Below are positions 4,910 through 18,710 of a DNA stretch of 64,000 nt, piece by piece (positions within the stretch are counted from its first letter, which is position 1; each line of letters starts with the position of its first letter). The stretch lies in the IMG/VR virus record IMGVR_UViG_3300049855_000348, positions 62,001 through 126,000 of that record; one strand, 5' to 3'. Under the pieces are notes generated by a model. The model saw only the letters and a program-made list of their open reading frames with translations, was not told the DNA's origin and searched no databases. Position numbers and translations under genes: made by a program.

Positions 4910-5366
4910 AATCGCTCCAGAAGGTACCAGGATCGAAGTTCTTGAACTGACCACCAGCAGACTTGTGTGCCCGCAGGATGCCAGCGAGTTTGCAACCCTT
5001 GTCGGTGAACTTCACCACCGGGTGGATGCCGGTGCCTTCCCAGATGCAGAGACCCATGGCGATCAGATCCTCGAAGCAACTCCAGTCGTCATGTTTCTCC
5101 AGTTTTGCACCGTGCTTCAGGAGGGTGGGGTAATGCGAGTTCGGGTACGCCCGGTTTGAACGGTTGGCCAAACCTGGGTGAACCCTGATATCGCAGCGCA
5201 TACGATCGATATCGATGACGCCACCGTTGTCGACGGCACGACACTCCAGGAAGGCGAAGGTCGCCCAGTGATCATGGCCCCAACGATCGACTGGCACGCT
5301 GGGATTTCCTGTCGCTTCGTCGGTAGGCTTGGCGACGGTCATGGAGAGCGGGCGCTGCTTGCTCAT
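4884..5366 (-). CDS. Hypothetical phage protein
   Basis: 160 aa ORF with phage-like codon usage, downstream of the repeated promoter. Confidence 0.75.
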   Translation of the reverse strand: MSKQRPLSMTVAKPTDEATGNPSVPVDRWGHDHWATFAFLECRAVDNGGVIDIDRMRCDIRVHPGLANRSNRAYPNSHYPTLLKHGAKLEKHDDWSCFEDLIAMGLCIWEGTGIHPVVKFTDKGCKLAGILRAHKSAGGQFKNFDPGTFWSDYGHKSNAG

Positions 5367-5414
5367 TCAAGAGTTCCAGATCAGGAGGTAGAGACGATAG
5401 AGGAAGGACTGCAT
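5367..5414 (-). CDS. Putative leaderless 15-aa micro-ORF (MQSFLYRLYLLIWNS)
   Basis: ATG lies 5 nt after the -10 of the promoter at 5420-5447; its TGA directly abuts the next ATG (TGAATG). Confidence 0.4.
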   Translation of the reverse strand: MQSFLYRLYLLIWNS

Positions 5415-5419
5415 GATTT

Positions 5420-5447
5420 CCTATAGCGACTGATTGATCTAAGTCAA
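5420..5447 (-). promoter_or_regulatory. Repeated sigma70-like promoter, copy 1
   Basis: TTGACT-TAGATCAATCAGTCGC-TATAGG. Confidence 0.75.
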
Positions 5448-5753
5448 CGATCCGGTTTCGTTACTGGTCAATCCGCTTTCGAGATGTCTGATGTTGATCG
5501 ACTCTCTCGACGTGTAGTCGACGCGAACGATCTCCATGCCAGCGGTCGCCTCCAATGGGAGTTGTGTCCTGATGAAGTTCAACAGTGCCTGCATCTGATC
5601 ATACTGGTCATAGCAGATTGGTGGGCTGCGCTTGCTGAGGATCTTCTTGGTGTAGCTTAGCGTCATCCGACCACCGTTCTTGCCGGAGAGCCGGCTGAAC
5701 ACTGAGCAGAGGTAGTCGTTCTTGCTGCCGACGATGCAGTAGCAGGTCATCAT
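5439..5753 (-). CDS. Hypothetical protein with C-terminal GLTxxExG tag
   Basis: ATGA overlap with the 5750 gene; ends ESGLTSNETGSLT. Confidence 0.7.
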   Translation of the reverse strand: MMTCYCIVGSKNDYLCSVFSRLSGKNGGRMTLSYTKKILSKRSPPICYDQYDQMQALLNFIRTQLPLEATAGMEIVRVDYTSRESINIRHLESGLTSNETGSLT

Positions 5754-5980
5754 AGAGTTCCCTTCTCTTCCTGCGTCAGACCAAGGCTCGCTTCGTATTT
5801 CGCCTGTGAGGTCTTGAGCATATCCCAATGGACCTCAGCTTCCTTGATCAGTCGCAGGCAAGTCTTGCAGGTGACCAGTGCTTTGTTGTCAGAAGCACGC
5901 ATGGCGTAAACGCCACAGTACGACTTGCCGGCGTTTGGTCGAGTTCCGTGAACGATGATAATTTTCTTCTGGTCATTCAT
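5750..5980 (-). CDS. Small zinc-finger-like protein with GLTxxExG tag
   Basis: H..CG..VTCKTC motif; ends SLGLTQEEKGTL. Confidence 0.75.
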   Translation of the reverse strand: MNDQKKIIIVHGTRPNAGKSYCGVYAMRASDNKALVTCKTCLRLIKEAEVHWDMLKTSQAKYEASLGLTQEEKGTL

Positions 5981-6192
5981 GCTGGCATTCCGGTCTCGGC
6001 TGAGGTCAATCCACCAGCTTCAATCTCGGCTTCGTAGTCTTCCTGCGAGACTTCACCACGGCACACCGGACAGGTGACCAGCGGCTGCATGGATGCGATC
6101 TTGATCCCCTTCGTGTTGGTCCGCAGACCGCAGGCGGTGGTGTCGTTCCTGAACAGGCCACGGTAGTGCGTGTGATCGAGTGATGGCTTCAC
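5977..6192 (-). CDS. Small zinc-finger-like protein with GLTxxExG tag
   Basis: H..ACG..VTCPVC motif; ends GGLTSAETGMPA. Confidence 0.75.
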   Translation of the reverse strand: MKPSLDHTHYRGLFRNDTTACGLRTNTKGIKIASMQPLVTCPVCRGEVSQEDYEAEIEAGGLTSAETGMPA

Positions 6193-6374
6193 GCTGGCAC
6201 CCCTTGCTCTGCCGTGGTGAGACCGGGCTTCTCTTCTTCACCGAGACGAGCCCAGGCCAAGCACGACGAGCACGTGATCATGCCGATCTCTTTCGTGGTA
6301 CGAACGTCCGGATCGGCGAGTTGTCTTCCACACCCAGTATGATCGGTGAAGATGACATGCCAGTGAATCATCAC
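6189..6374 (-). CDS. Small zinc-finger-like protein with GLTxxExG tag
   Basis: H..GCG..ITCSSC motif; ends PGLTTAEQGVPA. Confidence 0.75.
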   Translation of the reverse strand: MMIHWHVIFTDHTGCGRQLADPDVRTTKEIGMITCSSCLAWARLGEEEKPGLTTAEQGVPA

Positions 6375-6787
6375 GTCGGCCTCCCTTGCTCTTCAGCGGT
6401 GAGACCGGTCGGAGCTTCCTCGTCTGATTCCCTGACCACATTCCCTTCAGCATCGAGCCACACACAGCGGGTAGAAGCCTTGATAACAATCACTCGTTTT
6501 TCAGGCATCTCGAAACCCTGACCAATTCCTTGATTGGCTGGCGGTTTGACTGGTGGCATCGGGATACCACCACTAAGACCACTGGTGGCATCGGTTGTCG
6601 GCTGCACAGCAAAGGACTCTGGTTCCTCACCATCTCGCCAGTCGACATTGGTTCTGAACTTCCACTGCTTCTTCCGGCAGTTCATGCAGATACGAAGATC
6701 GTGATGATCACCCAGAGTGGTTTTCTTACCCACAAAGGGCATCGACCATTTGTGATAGCCTACCCGACATCCGAGTGTTGCGCTCAT
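6371..6787 (-). CDS. Hypothetical protein (C..GxHKW..CxxC N-terminus) with GLTxxExG tag
   Basis: Overlapping start and stop with neighbours; ends TGLTAEEQGRPT. Confidence 0.75.
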   Translation of the reverse strand: MSATLGCRVGYHKWSMPFVGKKTTLGDHHDLRICMNCRKKQWKFRTNVDWRDGEEPESFAVQPTTDATSGLSGGIPMPPVKPPANQGIGQGFEMPEKRVIVIKASTRCVWLDAEGNVVRESDEEAPTGLTAEEQGRPT

Positions 6788-7934: not shown

Positions 7935-8537
7935 ATGAGCCCAGAATTAGTTGCAGAAGTGTTCACCCGCATCCATGACCAGAACCTCTGGGGCAGTCCT
8001 GAGAGCGTTTCTGGCGGTGGAAGTGCTCTGGAGGCCACCACCAAGATCCGCGCCGAGATCCCGGCCCTGATCGCCCAGCATGGCATCCTGAGCATGCTCG
8101 ACTTGCCCTGTGGAGACTTCAACTGGATGGGTGAGATGCTGAAGGTTCTGCCTGATCTGCGGTACACCGGTGGTGATGTGGTGGTTCCGCTCATCGAGAA
8201 GAACATCCGCAAGTACCCCACCATTCGCTTTGAGGTGTTGGATGTGATCTCGTCACCCCTGGCACAGCATGATCTGGTGTTCTGCCGTGACTGCTTGGTT
8301 CACCTGCCTGAGAAGCTGGTTCGCAAGGCCATCGAGAACATCAAGGAGAGCAACTGCCGCTTCCTCCTGGCGACCACGTTCCCCAAGGCCATCCCCCAGG
8401 ACATCGAAGTCGGACAGTGGCGTCCGCTCAACCTGATCCCCTTTCTGGGAGAGCCGATCCAGGTGATCAGTGAGTGCTTTGCTGACCTGGATGGCGTACC
8501 AACCGAGAAGCAACTCGGACTGTGGCGCTTCCGGTAA
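7935..8537 (+). CDS. Class I SAM-dependent methyltransferase
   Basis: WG..ES.SG.GS, MLDLPCGDFNW, Y.GGDVV and CRDCLVHL motifs. Confidence 0.85.
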   Translation: MSPELVAEVFTRIHDQNLWGSPESVSGGGSALEATTKIRAEIPALIAQHGILSMLDLPCGDFNWMGEMLKVLPDLRYTGGDVVVPLIEKNIRKYPTIRFEVLDVISSPLAQHDLVFCRDCLVHLPEKLVRKAIENIKESNCRFLLATTFPKAIPQDIEVGQWRPLNLIPFLGEPIQVISECFADLDGVPTEKQLGLWRFR

Positions 8538-9199
8538 TGCCTCCTCCACAACCACAACGACCGTTGTCCGACAAGGGTGACGTGGATGAGATCGGCGACC
8601 TGAAGGATCGCCGGACATGGCTGTCTGGCCTGCTGGTGCAGTTCGCCTACACCAACTTCCACCACGACCCACATCCGATCTGTGTGGTCCTGTACGCCGA
8701 CCGTCGGTACACCCATGCCATCAACGTCAGCTACCTGAGCGGTCAGCAGCGCCGGCAGTTCAAGGGTGGTCTGCGGATGTGGTACATGCTCGATCCTCGG
8801 CTGAAGTACCACTGGATGAAGATCTACAACAAGACGTGCTTGGTCGGCTATCGGACCTACTTCACCGGTCTGCTTCATCCGCTGACGGCTTGGCCCATTC
8901 AAGAGGTGAAGGACTCCATCCCGCAAGCCATGGGGCTGCTGGGCTCGATCAACGGCATCAAGCCGACGGACTGGGGCAAGTTCGCTGCTCGTGCCACCAA
9001 GGCGGCGACGGCTCGTGATCTGGCCATGAGCAACCGGCCTAGCGCCCGTCCTAATCAGCAGAGACCATCGAATCGTCCGAACGCAAGACCATTGGCGATT
9101 CGGGTTGGAGAAGCTATTCGACGGGCTGAACGTGGGATGAACCAGGGATCAATCCGACCGGGTCCTCTGCGACCACGTGGCCAGCGACCGGGGCAGTGA
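8537..9199 (+). CDS. Putative DNA end protector (T4 gp2-like)
   Basis: D..P.C.VL...AIN.SYL...R..F...YRTY pattern; basic C-terminal tail. Confidence 0.45.
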   Translation: MPPPQPQRPLSDKGDVDEIGDLKDRRTWLSGLLVQFAYTNFHHDPHPICVVLYADRRYTHAINVSYLSGQQRRQFKGGLRMWYMLDPRLKYHWMKIYNKTCLVGYRTYFTGLLHPLTAWPIQEVKDSIPQAMGLLGSINGIKPTDWGKFAARATKAATARDLAMSNRPSARPNQQRPSNRPNARPLAIRVGEAIRRAERGMNQGSIRPGPLRPRGQRPGQ

Positions 9200-9212: not shown

Positions 9213-9770
9213 TCACGGCTGATTCAAGGTATCGCCAGATAGACCAATGATCAGCCCACCAACAGAGATCATTGGTGTAACCATCGGAGAAATCTGCATG
9301 GTCATGTCGAGTTTTGCTTTGAATAAAACAGCACCTCTACCGGTTTTTGATTGACCGATTGAAATATGTGAAGCCAAGACGCTCTCCCCATCACACTCAG
9401 GGAAAGCGATGTCTAATGCATTCGTTATCGTTTTACCATCGAAAGCGAAACCACTACCACGTGGAACTGCGACACGATCGTAGTTCTTATAGCTCACTTC
9501 GTTGGTTGATTGATCGTCATTCGGTTCGCCATGATGCAGCGCAACATAGAATTTTTCTGACTCATCAACTGCCATCACCCTGTCGACTGGAAGACCACCA
9601 TCGCCGACCTGGACGGTATTTCCGAGATGCGGCAACACCTCAGGTGACGTTGGTTCGCGTTTGGTGATCTTGGGAAAGAGACCGGTCGCAGCGAGACCAT
9701 CCCAGTCCACACTGAACTTCATCAGTTCCTTCTGAGAGAGTCCGCCATCGCCGACAGGGATATCAGTCAT
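9213..9770 (-). CDS. Tail-fibre-associated structural-type domain with N-terminal VGDGGL tags
   Basis: FYVALH..P....TNEVSY..Y.RVA; paralog of 49074-49514; two VGDGGL copies. Confidence 0.7.
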   Translation of the reverse strand: MTDIPVGDGGLSQKELMKFSVDWDGLAATGLFPKITKREPTSPEVLPHLGNTVQVGDGGLPVDRVMAVDESEKFYVALHHGEPNDDQSTNEVSYKNYDRVAVPRGSGFAFDGKTITNALDIAFPECDGESVLASHISIGQSKTGRGAVLFKAKLDMTMQISPMVTPMISVGGLIIGLSGDTLNQP

Positions 9771-9957
9771 GAAGATCTTTCAGTGGAGTGAGCGTTGGCT
9801 TCAGGCCGATCTCTCTTGCCAGTTCTTCAGCCTCTTCTTCAGCCATTTCTTCAAGGATCTTCTGTCGCTCTCTAGCCTCAAGAGCCTCACGGAGCCGTTG
9901 GATACCAGGGCTCACCTTCTCCAAGCCACCATCATAGACCTGAATTGGATTGTTCAC
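9763..9957 (-). CDS. Small coiled-coil protein with IQVYDGGL motif
   Basis: Overlaps both neighbours in a minus-strand run. Confidence 0.7.
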   Translation of the reverse strand: MNNPIQVYDGGLEKVSPGIQRLREALEARERQKILEEMAEEEAEELAREIGLKPTLTPLKDLHD

Positions 9958-10324
9958 GTCTCTTCCCGAGGACGAAGGAGTTGAAGATGGATTCGAGGCA
10001 CCCCTCGTAGAGTAAGGTCGGCAGTGGATTACGAAACTGAATGTAGCTCATGGCATGGCCCATGCTCTCCAGCGTCTTGGTCAACTGGTCCATGTTCTGC
10101 ATCCCTTTGAGACGACGCTCGAAGTCGAGGATATTCGAGTGCTCAGCCCATTCGGGCTGCATGATACCCATGCGGAGGGCACGCTCATTGGTGTCGGCTT
10201 TGTAACCGCAGTTCTGACCGTTCTCGTCGAACAGGATCGCACCAACGTTGCAGCACTCATCGTGTCTGACTTGGTCGACGATCTTGAGGATCGAGTAGTT
10301 GCCGTATTTGGCCTTCTCATTCAT
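9932..10324 (-). CDS. DUF3037-like protein
   Basis: YSILK.V.....E..NVG.IL N-terminal signature. Confidence 0.6.
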   Translation of the reverse strand: MNEKAKYGNYSILKIVDQVRHDECCNVGAILFDENGQNCGYKADTNERALRMGIMQPEWAEHSNILDFERRLKGMQNMDQLTKTLESMGHAMSYIQFRNPLPTLLYEGCLESIFNSFVLGKRREQSNSGL

Positions 10325-10698
10325 GGGAGTCTCCTTACTGGTCCGCCGACTACGCCACTAGGTAGGCGCTTTTTGCTGGCTGCAAGGAGTTCATCTGCGT
10401 CGGTGTACTCGACAGCATTCCTCTCGCCTGGGTTTCCACCTCCGAGATCTCCATCACCGACATCAACTGAGATCGTCTGACCAACCTCGTCTACCTCAAC
10501 CTTCCTGTTGTTCCGATCGAGGATGATCTGGGCGATGGTGGAAGCCTTGATGGTGATCTGACCAACAGTGCCGTCCTTCATCTGAACTTTGATTTCGATC
10601 TCATCCTCCTCGGTGACATTGGCGTGGACGATTCTCCTCCCGACGTTGAGATCATCATCCGGAAAGTCCGAGAGGAGAGGATTGATTCCCTTTGCCAT
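10321..10698 (-). CDS. Hypothetical protein with ISVDVGDGDL motif
   Basis: ATGA overlap with the downstream gene. Confidence 0.7.
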   Translation of the reverse strand: MAKGINPLLSDFPDDDLNVGRRIVHANVTEEDEIEIKVQMKDGTVGQITIKASTIAQIILDRNNRKVEVDEVGQTISVDVGDGDLGGGNPGERNAVEYTDADELLAASKKRLPSGVVGGPVRRLP

Positions 10699-10702
10699 CT
10701 GA

Positions 10703-11179
10703 TCACCGCTTCGCAGCGATCAGCATGCACTTGTAGAGATTCCAGAACGCTGACCACGGACGTTTCTCGGTCAGTTCGTTGACCTCGATGAAGTGAATTA
10801 GTTCGATGACACTCCCCACGGTATCACAGGGAAAGTGCTCTAATTTCACCGTGTCGATGCCACCGTCGAGAACTTGAATGTTGTTCTCTTGGCTGTCGAC
10901 GTGTTTGAGGATGTCGTTGAGCAACGCTTTATGATCGATGCCTTCACTGTCGGTGAATTCACGCTTGCGGTTCTCTTCCTGAGCCGTCAGTAGAAGTTTG
11001 CGTAGGTCTTCATGTGAGACCACTCGTTCATGAATGGTATCACTACCGGCATCGATCTTCTCAACGTAGGTGAATTTCTTATCACCCTTCACGTAGATGA
11101 GATCGCCGACGATATGTCTGGACTGATCACCGGGTTCCTGGACCCGTATCCGCATCGGTTCTGTTTTTGTCTTGGCCAT
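10703..11179 (-). CDS. Hypothetical protein with IQVLDGGI motif
   Basis: TAATG overlap with the upstream gene. Confidence 0.75.
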   Translation of the reverse strand: MAKTKTEPMRIRVQEPGDQSRHIVGDLIYVKGDKKFTYVEKIDAGSDTIHERVVSHEDLRKLLLTAQEENRKREFTDSEGIDHKALLNDILKHVDSQENNIQVLDGGIDTVKLEHFPCDTVGSVIELIHFIEVNELTEKRPWSAFWNLYKCMLIAAKR

Positions 11180-12327
11180 TACTGGCTCCCTCCCGTGAGC
11201 TTCTTCGTCCCGAATGAGGTTGCCAGCGACTTAGCAACCTCGGCTTCCTTGCCGGTGCCGGCTGCGAGCAAGACACGGATGGCAGCCGTCTCAGCGAGTT
11301 GACTGCCTTCCTCCATGGCTTGCTCGACCACGAAGGTAGTGTTGTTCTTCCGACGCTCAGCGACCAACTGGAGGCTCTTGATCAGTTCCTCCATGGCCTT
11401 CTTGCCGATCGGCTTGCCGACGTTCTCACTCAGACTCTTGATGATGGCGGTAAGATCCTTGTCTTGCTCGCTGATCGAATCGTTGAGCCGCTGACGCATC
11501 CGATCCAGGATCGAGTCAGGGTTGAAGACACGTTCACGCAGGGCCACCGCGTTCTCGTCGATCATCCAGTAGTGATCCAGCGTGCAGGGGACCGATGAGC
11601 GACCAATGAGGAAGCTGGCGAACTGCTCAGGAGACAGAGCGATGCGGGCGATGGTCCGACCATCAGGGTTGTGGACCTCGATCGTCACATAGTGCTGGTG
11701 CTCGGACATGCTGCCGTTGAGATACCGCTGACCCGAGGTGATGGTCAGGGAGATCGTAGATCTGGAGCGTTCGAGATCTGACCAGTTGTTGTAGTCGTGC
11801 AGACCGTGCTGGGTGGACTGTTCGGCGTCGGTCCCCTCGTGCTTCTTGTGGCCATGCACATCAGCGCCCTTGCGAAGATTCTCAGCAGCGTCTTCGAGCT
11901 TCCGATGTGCCTGGATCAACTTGGCGAATGCCAGGATCTCTTCCTCAGAGATGGCCAGCATGCCCTTCGAGTTGCGGAAGCTGTAGTTCAGATTCAACTT
12001 CTCAGCCGCATTGATCCACGTACGGGCAGTGTGGTCAGAGACAGCGACGACACCCTGCTTCGGCAGGTAATTGATATCGTGGAGACCATCGGTCTTGAAT
12101 TGGACACGGTCGCAGTTGGCGTGCAGGTTGGAATCGACCGCCTCCGGTTTCACGTCAGTACGCTGTGCCTTGGCGACGACTGGACCTTCCAGGCCGATCT
12201 CATTTTCGATGTAGGAAACGGCGTCCAACAGTTCCTTCGGACCTTTGTACTCAACATTCCCAGCGAAGAGTGCCTTGGTGGACTTGGCCAGCGTCCGCAT
12301 GGCGATGATGAGCTTGTCGTTTTGCAT
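11179..12327 (-). CDS. Hypothetical protein, leaderless
   Basis: 382 aa; ATG 6 nt after promoter copy 4. Confidence 0.8.
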   Translation of the reverse strand: MQNDKLIIAMRTLAKSTKALFAGNVEYKGPKELLDAVSYIENEIGLEGPVVAKAQRTDVKPEAVDSNLHANCDRVQFKTDGLHDINYLPKQGVVAVSDHTARTWINAAEKLNLNYSFRNSKGMLAISEEEILAFAKLIQAHRKLEDAAENLRKGADVHGHKKHEGTDAEQSTQHGLHDYNNWSDLERSRSTISLTITSGQRYLNGSMSEHQHYVTIEVHNPDGRTIARIALSPEQFASFLIGRSSVPCTLDHYWMIDENAVALRERVFNPDSILDRMRQRLNDSISEQDKDLTAIIKSLSENVGKPIGKKAMEELIKSLQLVAERRKNNTTFVVEQAMEEGSQLAETAAIRVLLAAGTGKEAEVAKSLATSFGTKKLTGGSQ

Positions 12328-12333
12328 TGGATA

Positions 12334-12361
12334 CCCTTAGCGACCTTTTGGTCTAAGTCAA
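12334..12361 (-). promoter_or_regulatory. Repeated promoter, copy 4
   Basis: TTGACT-TAGACCAAAAGGTCGC-TAAGGG-TATCCA-ATG. Confidence 0.75.
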
Positions 12362-12362
12362 T

Positions 12363-12614
12363 TTATCTCTCTTGGACGACGATATCAACCGGCAGACTCC
12401 GATCGTTACGGAACGTCCGCTCGGTGGTCTTGAGGAGGATCACCAGACCCATCACGCCGAGGTCCTGGTTGTCGGGGTCGATCTGTTGAGTGGTATGCGG
12501 GATCTGATCACGTCCAACGAAGTAGGCGTGAGCGATCTCTGGAGCCTCGGCCAGAACTATCCCGATGATGTCACCGTGGTGATTCTTGGCGATGAAGATG
12601 AAGCGTTTGCGCAT
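12363..12614 (-). CDS. Hypothetical protein
   Basis: ORF in minus-strand run with an upstream AAGGA SD. Confidence 0.65.
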   Translation of the reverse strand: MRKRFIFIAKNHHGDIIGIVLAEAPEIAHAYFVGRDQIPHTTQQIDPDNQDLGVMGLVILLKTTERTFRNDRSLPVDIVVQER

Positions 12615-12784
12615 GCGAGTTCCTTGCGTTCTTGAAGCACGGTGTCAATGAAGGCACCGAGGCGCTTCACCGCTTTGAGATCAGTCTCACCAACACAGGA
12701 CAAGATTGGTCTGCCTGTACGGTCTCGAACGACCACTCGACAGTTGGAGACGGAGACCTTCAGGAAGAGATCGGGAATGGTCAT
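12557..12784 (-). CDS. Hypothetical protein
   Basis: ATGA overlap with the 12781 gene. Confidence 0.55.
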   Translation of the reverse strand: MTIPDLFLKVSVSNCRVVVRDRTGRPILSCVGETDLKAVKRLGAFIDTVLQERKELACANASSSSPRITTVTSSG

Positions 12785-13047
12785 GTTTTTTCGATTGAGA
12801 CAATCGAATCGGACTGCATCGCTATCGCTATGCTATCCTGAAAGTCAGCCAGAGCTAACCGCTCTTCCTCCGGCATCGGTTTACCTCGTTTCGCTTTTAC
12901 AACATGAAGTGGTTTGTGCTTCAATGAAGCACCGCCAGGGAAAGACTGGATAGCCGTCCAGATCGCCACCGATTGAGGAACCGGCAGGCCATCACCGACT
13001 TGAATCGATATGGTCAGATCCCGTGCCATCGTCCACACTGCTTGCAT
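12781..13047 (-). CDS. Hypothetical protein with ISIQVGDGL motif
   Basis: Start may be 13029; carries a tag variant. Confidence 0.6.
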   Translation of the reverse strand: MQAVWTMARDLTISIQVGDGLPVPQSVAIWTAIQSFPGGASLKHKPLHVVKAKRGKPMPEEERLALADFQDSIAIAMQSDSIVSIEKT

Positions 13048-13123: not shown

Positions 13124-15049
13124 TCATGCGTACTGCTCCTGTGCGGCCTTCGCCGACTGCTTGCGGACCCAGCGATCGAAGATGCCGATCAGGTCGTTGA
13201 TGTTCTTGCAGGTCACCGTCTCGACGATGCCGGAGTGCTTCACCACCTCATCGAGCGACACCAGGAGGCACGCCTCGAAGCCGGCATCCTTGAGCATCTT
13301 CGAGAGCATGGGCACCTCGGTCTCGTACACCGCACCGTCGGTGAAGACGAAGGCTACCTTGCGGTTCGACTTGGCACGCAGGAGAGCCTTGACGCAACCA
13401 GTGCCGCAGGCGATCAGCGAGGTACCGCCATCCGAGTTGTGCTTGTTGCCGCGCACTGCCGAGACCTGCTCGTCGAGCGACTTGGTGATGGTGGCATCGG
13501 TGTTCCACACCACCTCAGCGTTCTCGCAGCTAGCAGCCTGGAGCGCAAAGAGAGCGTTGTGGGCGAAGCTGTTCAGCAAACCGTTGATGTTCGACGTGCT
13601 GCTGCTGAAGTCGGTAGCGACCACGCAGGCCACCGGCGCATCGGTGATCTCTTCGATCGAGTTCACGAAGGGCTTGCGGGCGAGCATGCCCTTGCGGTCA
13701 GCCGCCACCACGGTGGGCAGGTGCAGGCGACCGGTCTTCCGCAGACCGGCGACACGATCCATCACCAGCGTGCGCAGCTTGCGCATGCTCATCTTCACCC
13801 GGTTGGCGAAGTTCCGATCGACAGCGTCGGCAATCTTGGTGACGTTCACATCACCCTTCTCACTGCCGATGCCGCGAACGGTCGACAGATCGGTCTCCGG
13901 CATCTCGATTTCTTCGTTCTTGTCCGGGCCGTTCATCCCAGCCGAAGCCGAGTCGCCAGCGGCGTCTTCCTTGGCCTGAGCTTTCTTGGTGCGACCCACC
14001 TCGCCGACCTTGGCCTTGGCCTTCTCCAGGGCACCTTCCAGGTCTGCCGGCTGCTGAGCCTCCCCTTCCTGCTCGTTCTTCTTCTGGCCGCCAGAGCCAT
14101 TCTGAGAGGGTTTCGGCTCTTTGGGCTGCTGGGCACCGCCCTGGGGCTTGAAATCGTTCTGAGCGCCTTCCTGAGGCTCCTGATCGCCCTCCTCGCCACC
14201 CTCCCCCTCGCCATCCTCTTCCGGACGCTCTTTGGGGCGCTCGCCGGCACGACCAGCACCCGACTTGATGCGGATCTGGCTGTCGGCCTCCCCGTCTCCA
14301 CCACCCTCGCTGTCCTTCTGCTCACCCTTGGGAGCGGGCTGATCGTTGAGGATCTTGGTAGCCAGGGCAACGTTGGCTGACTTCTTGGCTTCCGGGAACA
14401 CGTCGAAGTAGGAGATGCACCACTTTTCCAGGGTGTCCTTGCTGACGGTCTTCAGACGGGTGATGCGCTGGGCTTCCTCGACCAGGGAGGCGAACTTATC
14501 CTTCCAGCCCGGCTGGTCTTCGTACTTCTTCTCGGCCACGTAGGCGTTGATCGAGTCGCTGGCAGCCAGACGGACCTCATCACCGCAGTGCGGGCGGAAG
14601 AAGAGCAACGCCCACAGGCTCGGATCGAAGTTCTCTTTCGACCAGGGGTCGCGGACGTTCTTGGCATCGGCAGCGTGCTCGTGGCCGGCTTCGTCATAGC
14701 GGTTGTTGGCGATGACGTTGATCGCCAGATTGGCCAGGACCGCCTCGTAGTGCGGACGGTTCAAGATGAACTGGCGTTCGATGCGGCAGTCGTCGATCAG
14801 GTTGGCGAGTTCACGCAGGTTGCCAGCCGGGTAGTTGGCCGGGTAGTTCAGGTGGCAGCACTCGTGGACCAGCACGGCGAAGCGGTCGTCTTCCTCCCAG
14901 TTGATCGCCGAGCCCATGATGACCTGACGGCCATTGGTGTGCGGGCCGTCGGACGGCAACCCAGCGATGACCTTGACCTGCTTGCCGGTGATGACCGTAG
15001 CGAAGGCAGAGGGCTTGGCGAAGTTGATGTTTGCTGATGCTTTGCTCAT
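13124..15049 (-). CDS. vWA-domain protein with N-terminal HExxH region (CobT-like MoxR partner), leaderless
   Basis: HECCH; long G/E/Q-rich linker; MIDAS residues DFSSS, GGT and FTDG. Confidence 0.85.
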   Translation of the reverse strand: MSKASANINFAKPSAFATVITGKQVKVIAGLPSDGPHTNGRQVIMGSAINWEEDDRFAVLVHECCHLNYPANYPAGNLRELANLIDDCRIERQFILNRPHYEAVLANLAINVIANNRYDEAGHEHAADAKNVRDPWSKENFDPSLWALLFFRPHCGDEVRLAASDSINAYVAEKKYEDQPGWKDKFASLVEEAQRITRLKTVSKDTLEKWCISYFDVFPEAKKSANVALATKILNDQPAPKGEQKDSEGGGDGEADSQIRIKSGAGRAGERPKERPEEDGEGEGGEEGDQEPQEGAQNDFKPQGGAQQPKEPKPSQNGSGGQKKNEQEGEAQQPADLEGALEKAKAKVGEVGRTKKAQAKEDAAGDSASAGMNGPDKNEEIEMPETDLSTVRGIGSEKGDVNVTKIADAVDRNFANRVKMSMRKLRTLVMDRVAGLRKTGRLHLPTVVAADRKGMLARKPFVNSIEEITDAPVACVVATDFSSSTSNINGLLNSFAHNALFALQAASCENAEVVWNTDATITKSLDEQVSAVRGNKHNSDGGTSLIACGTGCVKALLRAKSNRKVAFVFTDGAVYETEVPMLSKMLKDAGFEACLLVSLDEVVKHSGIVETVTCKNINDLIGIFDRWVRKQSAKAAQEQYA

Positions 15050-15055
15050 GCCCAG

Positions 15056-15083
15056 AGTATAGCGACAAAAAGGTCGCCGTCAA
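15056..15083 (-). promoter_or_regulatory. Repeated promoter, copy 5
   Basis: TTGACG-GCGACCTTTTTGTCGC-TATACT-CTGGGC-ATG. Confidence 0.85.
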
Positions 15084-17750: not shown

Positions 17751-18710
17751 TTAGAAAACCTGCTTGCCCAGATCCCCTCCGTTGCCCTGGCTGGCGAAGC
17801 GACCGGCGCGACCCTTCTTCACCGCCTCGGCCTGGGAATCGCTCACCGACAGCGGCTTGCCTTCAGCAGTCCAGATGTCGTTGAAGCACGAGCGCAGAGC
17901 GGTGATCTCGGCCTCATCATCCGAGAAGCGGGTCAGGAACATCGTCCGTGCCGTCTGGAAGGTGTGGACGGCCATGTTCTTGGCCAGATCCAGGAAGGCG
18001 CGGGTCGACACGTCCGAGTGGACGGCCTTGTTCTTCACCGCAGCACGCACCTTGCCGACGAACTGTTCCAGGGCCACCGCATCACGCGGATCGAGCTTGT
18101 CGACCGAGGAGTTGTTGCGCAGCACGGCGATGTCCAGTTCCTGGTGGTAGCCCAACTGGAGTTGGATGGCGAAGCGGTCGCGGAAGGCTTCGTTCATCAC
18201 CCGGACGCCCTCGTAGAAGGGGTTGCCGGCAGCGATCAGGCCGAACTTCTCGTGGGCCACGACGACTTCGGGCTCACCATCAGGACCCGGCTTCTCAGCC
18301 AGGACCAGTTCACGACGGTGGTCGAGCAAACCGTGGATGGCGAACGACACCTCGGGCTTGAGGCTGTTGATCTCGTCGAGCAGACAGACGTGACCGTTGC
18401 GGGCGGCACGGGTCAGGATGCCATCCATCCAGACGTAGCCGACACCGGAGGGGTTGGGGATCCACTGGCCGATCAGGGCTTCACTGGTCGCACCCGTGTG
18501 GCAGGGGATGTAGCAGTATTGCTGATTGAGGCGCAGAGCCACGTCAGCAGCCAGACTCGACTTGCCGGTGCCACGGGGTCCGAGGAGCAGACAGTTCTGC
18601 TTGTTGCGGATGGCGTCGCAGAGGATGTCCACGTCGGTCTTGTCGTGGTACTTGCGGGCGATGTAGGTCGAAACGGCGGGTGCCGGCTTGGTTGCTGTTT
18701 TCGTGGTCAT
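17751..18710 (-). CDS. MoxR/CbbQ/CobS-family AAA+ ATPase
   Basis: Walker A GPRGTGKS, Walker B LLDEIN, sensor AAGNP.YEG, MNEAFRDRF, STR. Confidence 0.92.
   Translation of the reverse strand: MTTKTATKPAPAVSTYIARKYHDKTDVDILCDAIRNKQNCLLLGPRGTGKSSLAADVALRLNQQYCYIPCHTGATSEALIGQWIPNPSGVGYVWMDGILTRAARNGHVCLLDEINSLKPEVSFAIHGLLDHRRELVLAEKPGPDGEPEVVVAHEKFGLIAAGNPFYEGVRVMNEAFRDRFAIQLQLGYHQELDIAVLRNNSSVDKLDPRDAVALEQFVGKVRAAVKNKAVHSDVSTRAFLDLAKNMAVHTFQTARTMFLTRFSDDEAEITALRSCFNDIWTAEGKPLSVSDSQAEAVKKGRAGRFASQGNGGDLGKQVF

What the first reader, a model, noticed from the sequence alone, without database searches (positions are those of the whole stretch)
9213..13047. Second shared peptide tag, IQVxDGGL, in five unrelated neighbouring proteins
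Seen in sequence: IPVGDGGL and VQVGDGGL (two copies in 9213-9770), IQVYDGGL (9763-9957), VDVGDGDL (10321-10698), IQVLDGGI (10703-11179) and IQVGDGL (12781-13047). Codons vary and the host proteins share nothing else. Inference: a short linear docking motif (beta-strand plus Asp-Gly turn) that recruits diverse proteins to one hub. The array lies directly downstream of the vWA gene, and vWA MIDAS sites are known to engage substrate acidic residues, so the AAA+/vWA pair is a candidate reader. With the GLTxxExG array, this points to a phage system of clustered, tag-addressed proteins.
Basis: partly seen in the sequence, partly recalled or inferred. Interest (0 to 1): 0.8.

Follow-up and report, generated by a model that had tools for sequence, protein, structure and literature searches.

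The report
Shared peptide tag in phage proteins
A short peptide, [IV]-Q-V-x-[D/E]-G, recurs far more often than chance in otherwise unrelated small proteins encoded just after a vWA gene in a group of uncultured giant phages, and it behaves like a portable address tag whose reader is still unknown.

Summary
All six copies are at the stated coordinates. Codons vary, and the five host proteins share nothing else.

The core [IV]QVx[D/E]G is kept in the same place, directly downstream of a CobT-like vWA gene, in six further related contigs (vWA 56-91% identical). It is about 40 times denser there than in the rest of those loci. No such array was found elsewhere in IMG/VR.

It sits at the N-terminus of small, fast-changing proteins and in a linker of two conserved families. 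AlphaFold2 places it in low-confidence, unburied segments. Cargo is exchanged at the motif between relatives.

One carrier (9213-9770) has a GP4 gp80 / Bas63 whisker fold.

Best reading: a portable beta-strand plus acidic-turn docking tag for one shared partner.

The vWA/AAA+ reader idea rests only on conserved synteny and an intact MIDAS. It is a candidate, not a finding.

Rivals: a rope-like strand for the whisker fold, a T4-CTS-like targeting or cleavage signal, self-association, or a recombination scar.

The parts
9738..9761 (-). Motif copy 1 of protein A (IPVGDGGL, residues 4-11)
   Evidence: AF2 pLDDT is about 60 for residues 1-10, coil.
9591..9614 (-). Motif copy 2 of protein A (VQVGDGGL, residues 53-60), at the junction with the whisker-like domain
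   Evidence: It overlaps the pLDDT <50 stretch 29-54 (block means 47 for residues 51-60, 66 for 61-70). A similar phi-G-D-x(1-3)-G-phi element sits at the same place in 34 of 125 Gp80-family representatives.
9213..9770 (-). Protein A (185 aa): disordered N-terminus with two tags, then a GP4 gp80 / whisker-fold domain (residues about 67-178)
   Evidence: Pfam PF23140, 3e-14, 53.9 bits against a cut-off of 27. PDB 8jou_a, E=2.4e-4. 704 family representatives. AF2 domain pLDDT >90. Foldseek top hits are 8jou_a, 9mt4 whiskers and 9c39_K.
9922..9945 (-). Motif copy in protein B (IQVYDGGL, residues 5-12)
9763..9957 (-). Protein B (64 aa): tag plus a charged helix; member of a small paralogous family in relatives
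   Evidence: similar to L027 4611-4997 (C-terminal part), 4990-5220 and 5363-5713, and to L028 3937-4149.
9932..10324 (-). Protein C (130 aa, DUF3037), no tag
   Evidence: Pfam PF11236, 4.7e-5. Orthologue in L027.
10444..10467 (-). Motif copy in protein D (VDVGDGDL, residues 78-85)
   Evidence: Kept in orthologues: IDVGDGDL, IQVGDGLG, IQVGEGDG, VQVGEGF, IQVGDGDL.
10321..10698 (-). Protein D (125 aa), conserved family with an internal tag in its C-terminal tail
10856..10879 (-). Motif copy in protein E (IQVLDGGI, residues 101-108)
   Evidence: Q102, V103 and G106 are invariant in six orthologues. Residues 101-107 lie in the pLDDT <50 linker 93-107.
10703..11179 (-). Protein E (158 aa), conserved family with the tag in the linker before a helical C-terminal domain
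11179..12327 (-). Protein F (382 aa), untagged array member used as the anchor to find relatives
   Evidence: phrog_6452, 3e-12.
12363..12784 (-). Proteins G (12363-12614) and H (12557-12784), untagged and conserved in relatives
12985..13005 (-). Motif copy in protein I (IQVGDGL, residues 15-21)
12781..13047 (-). Protein I (88 aa), tag near the N-terminus
   Evidence: similar to L027 656-898 over 27 residues that include the tag.
13124..15049 (-). [quoted passage not shown] It lies directly upstream of the array.
   Evidence: Pfam VWA is weak (E 0.0035-0.024). CobT / CobT_C look-alikes in the Atlas, TM 0.6-0.7. 19 homologues. Invariant H62, E63, H66, E91.
17751..18710 (-). MoxR/CobS-class AAA+ ATPase of the same conserved module
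   Evidence: PF07728 AAA_5, 3.2e-29; phrog_249, 2e-38.
8522..9199 (+). Convergent conserved gene (225 aa) that closes the array where the contig reaches that far (L027, L074, L075, L076)
   Evidence: tblastn, 62-84% identity in L074-L076; 94% to L027.

Best explanation
The motif is a portable peptide tag. It is a short beta-strand ([IV]-Q-V) running into an acidic turn ([D/E]-G), lying in flexible segments. A changing set of small accessory proteins of this jumbo-phage lineage displays it to one common partner, most likely by strand addition plus contact with the acidic residue.

Shown:
- The peptide is under selection.
- It is confined to one gene array.
- It is conserved across seven related contigs.
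- It is attached to unrelated cargoes.
- It sits at module boundaries.

Inferred:
- It is a docking tag.
- New cargoes are joined to it by recombination within the tag-coding DNA.
- The partner. My first choice, at roughly 0.3, is the CobT-like vWA protein, which lies upstream on the same strand with no predicted terminator between. Its MIDAS would take the D/E side chain, and it would work with the CobS-like AAA+ ATPase of the same module, as CbbO/CbbQ do with Rubisco.
For: Enrichment:
- 7 observed against 0.3 expected; 6 against 0.014 in the array proteins.
- Core pattern: 30 hits in 23.9 kb of arrays against 4 in 131 kb of the rest of the same loci. There are no hits in the other 60 kb of the window.

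Peptide-level constraint: synonymous variation.

Conservation:
- E and D orthologues keep the core while the flanks diverge.
- The core is present downstream of the vWA gene in L027, L028, L074, L075, L076 and L078.
- D and E interchange, so an acidic residue is what is kept.

Tag-like placement:
- 15 of the 30 array copies counted lie within about 15 residues of the start of a small, lineage-specific protein, on the called gene starts.
- The cargoes include a coiled coil, G/Y-rich tails, a whisker fold and a Cys-rich protein.

Exposure: low pLDDT and coil in proteins A and E.

Module exchange at the tag: the window's A1 module is followed by a whisker domain. The L027 A1 module is followed by a B-type tail, 78% identical to window protein B over 23 residues.

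Partner candidate:
- The array follows the vWA gene after 76 bases on the same strand in the window (at most ~300 in the relatives), with no terminator-like site between them in the window.
- MIDAS residues DxSxS, T and D are kept in all homologues read.
- vWA MIDAS sites bind a carboxylate of the client in MoxR/vWA pairs (PMC4660213).
Against:
- The seven contigs are relatives, so the conserved synteny with the vWA gene may be plain inheritance.
- The AF2 model of protein E is poor (mean pLDDT 62, six sequences), so 'exposed' is weakly based there.
- An apparent genome-wide D-to-E switch (L074, L075), which would have argued for a common reader, broke down in L078. There the E-family copy has Glu and the other two copies have Asp.
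- Only 64 kb of the 220 kb contig could be read, so copies elsewhere in the genome are not excluded.
Confidence: 0.45

Rival explanations
1. Rope-like strand for the whisker / fibre-I fold. The tag would be the linear strand that completes the incomplete beta-sandwich of GP4-gp80 / Bas63-whisker type domains, so tagged proteins (or protein A itself, head to tail) are strung onto whisker dimers on the virion.
For: - Protein A carries two tags in a disordered N-terminus directly in front of a confident gp80/whisker domain.
- That fold is known to bind a linear 'rope' by strand complementation (PMC12609058; PMC13730344).
- The gene next to GP4 gp80 has about ten repeats such as PIMLDGAALG, QVVMDGRGVP and RIDLTGSGLL, which resemble the tag.
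- Lacusarx has the same gene order: gp80-like, then a repeat protein, then a collar-like protein.
Against: - The whisker domain was not found in the parts of the other six contigs that were read, all of which keep the tag. In L027 the corresponding protein carries a B-type tail instead.
- A profile of the tag finds no chain in the PDB.
- GP4 gp79 could not be confirmed as the rope, because it is absent from the PDB sequences.
- The two tags in A are 49 residues apart, against about 15 in rope repeats.
- AF2 did not dock the tags onto the domain.
Confidence: 0.12
2. Targeting-and-processing signal, like the T4 capsid targeting sequence. The tag would direct proteins to an assembly (for example the prohead) and be cut after the acidic residue (V-x-D/E|G resembles the T4 gp21 site L/I-x-E|). 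Either a prohead protease or the HExxH domain of the neighbouring CobT-like protein would do the cutting.
For: - Mostly N-terminal position on hypervariable clustered proteins, as with T4 internal proteins (PMC9026906).
- Invariant V two residues before an invariant acidic residue followed by Gly.
- Invariant HExxH...E in the neighbouring protein, with peptidase-named look-alikes in the Atlas.
Against: - No evidence that any of these proteins is in the head.
- Internal copies in D and E would split conserved proteins.
- No Pfam, NCBIfam or PDB support for a peptidase domain.
- In T4, Asp at the cleavage position blocks processing.
- No copy of the motif was seen in any other gene of the window; no capsid, portal or protease gene was identified there.
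Confidence: 0.15
3. Self-association. The tag would be a beta-hairpin zipper through which the tagged proteins (conserved D and E plus variable partners) assemble with each other rather than with a separate reader.
For: - The strand / Asp-Gly turn / hydrophobic pattern is typical of hairpins.
- D and E are conserved core carriers, while the N-tagged proteins vary.
Against: No prediction or data on oligomers. The residues after the turn are not conserved across lineages.
Confidence: 0.1
4. No function of its own. The motif would be a scar of repeated 5'-end duplication or recombination, or a DNA/RNA signal that happens to be translated.
For: - Module exchange occurs at the motif.
- There is a mild excess of the rare codons ATT and CAA in the window copies.
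Against: - Synonymous sites vary freely, and the distance from start codons ranges from 1 to 127 codons.
- The motif is kept in orthologues at 27-63% identity, where it supplies 3 of 12 invariant columns.
- No Rfam match and no promoter or terminator pattern at the copies.
Confidence: 0.08

Closest known systems
T4 capsid targeting sequence (CTS) of internal proteins IPI/IPII/IPIII and Alt
   Same: A peptide of about 10 residues shared by otherwise unrelated, clustered, fast-evolving phage proteins. It is portable to new cargo (PMC9026906).
   Different: Different sequence. The T4 CTS is strictly N-terminal, is cut after Glu by gp21, and targets the scaffold core. Here the tag is also internal in two conserved families, Asp predominates, and neither head location nor cleavage is shown.
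MoxR-class AAA+ / vWA pairs that bind a client carboxylate through MIDAS (CbbQ/CbbO-Rubisco, Rea1-Rsa4/Ytm1, NorQ/NorD)
   Same: An AAA_5 ATPase and a vWA protein with complete MIDAS residues in one conserved module. The candidate clients present an invariant acidic residue in a flexible segment (PMC4660213).
   Different: Known pairs serve one defined client through a surface residue of a folded protein. Here there would be many clients sharing a linear tag. The ATPase and vWA genes are four genes apart. Nothing is tested.
Rope-whisker assemblies (GP4 fibre I gp80, Bas63 whisker on the collar rope domain, A1002 gp40/gp41 on gp39)
   Same: A linear strand completes an incomplete beta-sandwich. 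Protein A has this fold, and its tags resemble the repeats of the GP4 gp80 neighbour.
   Different: Ropes carry 4-22 closely spaced strands in one protein of a structural module. Here there are one or two strands per protein, in a non-structural-looking array, and the fold is absent from the relatives' arrays.
Leader or targeting peptides on variable cargo (encapsulin cargo-loading peptides; RiPP precursor arrays such as prochlorosins). This comparison is from my own knowledge.
   Same: One conserved short recognition peptide, with many divergent cargoes encoded side by side.
   Different: No encapsulin shell or modifying enzyme was seen. The cargoes are 50-190 residue proteins, not short cores.

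Membership tests
Short linear motif (functional peptide tag) | Occurs more often than chance, in unrelated proteins | tested here: met
Short linear motif (functional peptide tag) | Conserved in orthologues while the flanks diverge | tested here: met
Short linear motif (functional peptide tag) | Lies in a disordered or exposed segment | tested here: met
   AF2: protein A residues 1-66 have pLDDT 38-66; protein E residues 93-107 are below 50. The E model is of low quality.
Short linear motif (functional peptide tag) | Binds a defined partner | not testable with these tools
   No multimer prediction and no experiments.
GP4 gp80 / whisker (PF23140) fold, for protein A only | Sequence match above the curated cut-off | tested here: met
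   53.9 bits against 27; 704 representatives.
GP4 gp80 / whisker (PF23140) fold, for protein A only | Same fold as the solved members | tested here: met
   Foldseek: 8jou_a probability 1.00, TM 0.67; 9mt4 and 9c39 next.
GP4 gp80 / whisker (PF23140) fold, for protein A only | N-terminal helix used for dimerisation | tested here: not met
   It is replaced by a disordered tagged extension.
GP4 gp80 / whisker (PF23140) fold, for protein A only | A rope partner encoded nearby | tested here: inconclusive
   No multi-repeat rope gene in the array. The tags themselves are the only strand-like candidates.
T4-type capsid targeting sequence | Strictly N-terminal propeptide | tested here: not met
   Internal copies occur in the conserved families D and E and in protein A.
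T4-type capsid targeting sequence | Cleaved by the prohead protease; cargo found in the head | not testable with these tools
   Needs proteomics.
MoxR AAA+ / vWA client system | AAA_5 ATPase and a vWA protein with complete MIDAS residues in one module | tested here: met
   AAA_5 3.2e-29. The vWA match is weak by Pfam, but DxSxS / T / D are present and conserved, and CobT_C / VWA are structural look-alikes.
MoxR AAA+ / vWA client system | Client engages MIDAS through an acidic side chain | not testable with these tools
   Only the invariant D/E of the tag is seen.

The most novel reading that the evidence does not exclude
The phage 'CobS/CobT-like' pair is not a cobalamin gene set. It is a tag-reading machine. 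The vWA MIDAS docks the D/E-G of the tag. The AAA+ ATPase then remodels a rotating repertoire of tagged accessory proteins, or the invariant HExxH domain of the same protein cuts them. New cargo is plugged in by recombination at the tag. A second, C-terminal tag (GLTxxExG) on a neighbouring array in the same genomes would make this a two-address system.
Probability: 0.2. Interest if true: 0.85.

Novelty: new variant of a known kind. Interest (0 to 1): 0.62.

Why it matters
Shared address peptides on variable phage proteins are known from very few systems; the T4 capsid targeting sequence is the classic case. Here a new one is defined purely from sequence. It has a clear core, a bounded gene array and seven natural variants of the array.

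It gives a concrete handle on two open matters. The first is what the widespread phage CobS/CobT-like AAA+/vWA modules actually do. The second is how jumbo phages attach new accessory proteins to an existing pathway.

It is also directly testable: an eight-residue tag, one invariant acidic residue, and a short list of candidate readers.

Tried and rejected
- DNA-level signal (promoter, ribosome-binding site, RNA): rejected. Codons vary, the distance to start codons ranges from 1 to 127 codons, and there is no Rfam or promoter/terminator signal.
- Hidden internal start codons that would make every copy N-terminal: not consistent.
- Double-glycine leader, ubiquitin-like GG end, RTX repeat or TonB/TolB box: considered from memory and dropped. 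The second Gly and the spacing are not conserved.
- Motif arrays elsewhere: two degenerate-DNA scans of IMG/VR gave 24 and 37 single hits at chance level, and none of those loci had a cluster.
- Close relatives through protein F or the vWA protein: IMG/VR, JGI metagenomes and GTDB genomes returned only the source contig.
- Word-index search with protein A: found only itself.
- Tag profile against PDB sequences: no hit.
- GP4 gp79 against the PDB: no hit, so its identity as the rope stays inferred.
- Peptidase assignment of the CobT-like N-domain: no Pfam, NCBIfam or PDB support.
- Concerted D-to-E switch as evidence of co-evolution with a reader: abandoned after L078 showed mixed states.
- ESM Atlas search for protein E: nothing above noise.

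Full report
**Source and setting.** The window is part of IMGVR_UViG_3300049855_000348, a 220 kb viral contig from a freshwater-sediment metagenome. It has no near relative among 50,697 deposited phage genomes. Baseplate and tail-fibre genes lie in the window.

The finding lies in a minus-strand block with this gene order:
- AAA+ ATPase, 17751-18710 (AAA_5, 3.2e-29)
- four small or unknown genes
- a 641-residue vWA protein, 13124-15049
- nine tightly packed genes, which I call I, H, G, F, E, D, C, B and A (13047 down to 9213)
- a convergent gene, 8522-9199

**The observation.** Six of these are in the array, on the coding strand and in frame. Residue shuffles expect 0.3 per window, and 0.014 in the nine array proteins. 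A pattern-free test (best ungapped 8-mer score between different array proteins) also stands out: 7 pairs against a mean of 0.8, one of them being the overlapping ORFs G/H.

Third codon positions vary freely, so the constraint is on the peptide. BLASTP of the array proteins against each other finds nothing beyond the motif.

**Relatives.** Protein F and the vWA protein led to further contigs in public assemblies:
- L027 (F 71%, vWA fragment 91% identical)
- L028
- L074 (vWA 73-75%)
- L078 (70%)
- L075 (62-63%)
- L079 (60%)
- L076 (56-57%)

In every one with enough sequence, the stretch just downstream of the vWA gene carries the motif:
- L027 has at least nine copies (ten with the variant VQVGDDGL), mostly as M-N-E-P-[IV]-Q-V-[GY]-D-G at the very start of small proteins.
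- L074 has CIQVHEGDG[VI] twice, in front of Gly/Tyr-rich tails.
- L075 has IQVIEGDGV.
- L076 has MEEIDSIQVGDGH.
- L078 has MKRRAIQVGDGGL.

The two conserved families keep the motif internally. In family E the copies read IQVLDGGI, VQVLDGGI, VQVLDGDA, VQVLEGDV, IQVFEGDA, IQVMDGQA and VQVLEGDV, and Q, V and G of the motif are three of only twelve invariant columns at 27-63% identity. In family D they read VDVGDGDL, IDVGDGDL, IQVGDGLG, IQVGEGDG, VQVGEGF and IQVGDGDL, with a degenerate VQCGDNDL in L079.

The lasting core is therefore [IV]-Q-V-x-[D/E]-G. This core occurs 30 times in 23.9 kb of arrays, against 4 times in the other 131 kb of the same loci and never in the other 60 kb of the window. 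Two degenerate-DNA scans of IMG/VR found only chance-level single hits and no other array. The feature is specific to this lineage.

**Anatomy of the tag.** In an AlphaFold2 model built on 110 sequences, protein A has a confident domain (residues about 70-178, pLDDT above 90). Its N-terminal 66 residues are low-confidence (pLDDT 38-66), with no strand or helix predicted over residues 1-60 apart from one short helix at 13-15, and that stretch holds both copies. In protein E the copy sits in a linker with pLDDT below 50, between a beta-rich N-terminal part and a helical C-terminal part. That model is weak (mean 62, six sequences).

The sequence pattern is alternating hydrophobic residues, then Asp/Glu-Gly, often followed by Pro or a charged stretch. 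It reads as a strand running into a turn.

Between relatives, cargo changes at the tag. The first 52 residues of window protein A match L027 4611-4997 (47% identity over residues 4-60). After the second tag, the window has the folded domain, whereas L027 has a tail 78% identical to window protein B.

**The one recognisable cargo.** The domain of protein A belongs to PF23140 (GP4 fibre I gp80; 53.9 bits against a cut-off of 27). It matches PDB 8jou_a and has 704 representatives in a library of 1.84 billion proteins. Its model superposes best on GP4 fibre I, the Bas63 whiskers and the Sf14 neck.

According to the Bas63 and A1002 structure papers, this fold is an incomplete sandwich that is completed by a strand of a linear 'rope'. 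The gene next to GP4 gp80 has about ten repeats that look like the tag: PIMLDGAALG, QVVMDGRGVP and RIDLTGSGLL. Lacusarx has the same gene order. I could not confirm that protein as the rope, and a tag profile finds nothing in the PDB.

About a quarter of gp80-family members (34 of 125) carry phi-G-D-x(1-3)-G-phi, commonly [IV]-G-D-A-[TG]-G-L, just before their first strand. That is the position of the second tag in protein A. I read this as the likely short homology at which a gp80-like gene was joined behind a pre-existing tag.

The whisker domain was not found in the sequenced parts of the relatives' arrays, so it cannot be the general reader unless it is encoded elsewhere in those genomes.

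**The vWA idea.** The array starts 76 bases after the vWA gene, on the same strand, with no terminator-like site between them. A promoter-like site lies just upstream of the vWA start. The MIDAS residues are present and conserved: DxSxS (ATDFSSS), T (GGT) and D (FTDG). In MoxR/vWA pairs the MIDAS takes a carboxylate of the client (PMC4660213).

The tag offers an invariant acidic residue for which Asp and Glu interchange. It is not evidence for it, because all seven contigs are kin. An apparent genome-wide switch from D to E (L074, L075) dissolved when L078 showed both states.

**Verdict.**
- The tag is real, selected and portable. I put its being a functional peptide tag for a shared partner at about 0.75.
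- The full best explanation, including docking by strand addition and an acidic contact, I put at 0.45.
- Among partners, the CobT-like vWA protein is my first choice (about 0.3).
- The rivals are a whisker-rope strand (0.12), a CTS-like targeting or cleavage signal (0.15), self-association (0.10) and a functionless scar or DNA signal (0.08).

Noticed in passing
window 5439-6787 (minus strand); L027 6903-8577: The other tag, GLTxxExG, sits at the extreme C-terminus of five consecutive small CxxC (zinc-ribbon-like) proteins in the window. It is kept in six such proteins in L027: GLTPDEQGKPG, GLTEAERGTPA, GLTAAEQGAS, GLTEDERGTPT, GLTEDEKGTL and GLTTQETGSLT. These proteins look like tandem paralogues, and the last codons overlap the next gene's start region.
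   Followed up: partly
window 14777-14866 (minus strand; residues 62-91 of the vWA protein): H62-E63-x-x-H66 and E91 are invariant in 16 homologues. This is a zincin-like HExxH...E signature in the CobT-like N-domain. Atlas look-alikes include clusters named peptidase M48 and DUF2201_N, but Pfam, NCBIfam and the PDB give nothing.
   Followed up: partly
L074 13886-14191: A ClpS-like gene (PF02617, 2.4e-7) sits inside the array of one relative, right after the D orthologue. The window has a DUF3037 gene at that position (9932-10324).
   Followed up: no
L074 12130-12803; L075 12246-12509: The tagged proteins of these relatives consist of the tag, then NHRWD, then long Gly/Tyr/Asp/His low-complexity tails (GYGYG, GDGHG).
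   Followed up: no
L070 2206-3183 (Ralstonia phage GP4, gene next to gp80); L071 2404-4035 (Lacusarx): Both neighbours of gp80-like genes are built of 10 or more short repeats of the form G-x-G-x-x-phi-x-phi-[D/S/T]-G-x-G. They are likely the 'rope' proteins of chain-like fibres. The GP4 protein is not among the PDB chain sequences.
   Followed up: partly
window 9932-9957 and 9763-9770: The tag-coding start of B overlaps the end of C by 26 bases, and the start of A overlaps the end of B by 8 bases. The array genes are packed with overlaps throughout.
   Followed up: no
L079 5694-6275; contig of P0166 (no DNA held): A relative carries an Acb2/Tad1-hairpin family gene (anti-defence sponge family) about 4 kb from its vWA gene. 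Another has a Cas12f1-like/TnpB gene just past its array.
   Followed up: no
window 15056-15083 (minus strand): The best sigma-70-like match of the region (10 of 12) lies just upstream of the vWA start. Terminator-like sites are fewer than in shuffles (1 against 5.9).
   Followed up: no
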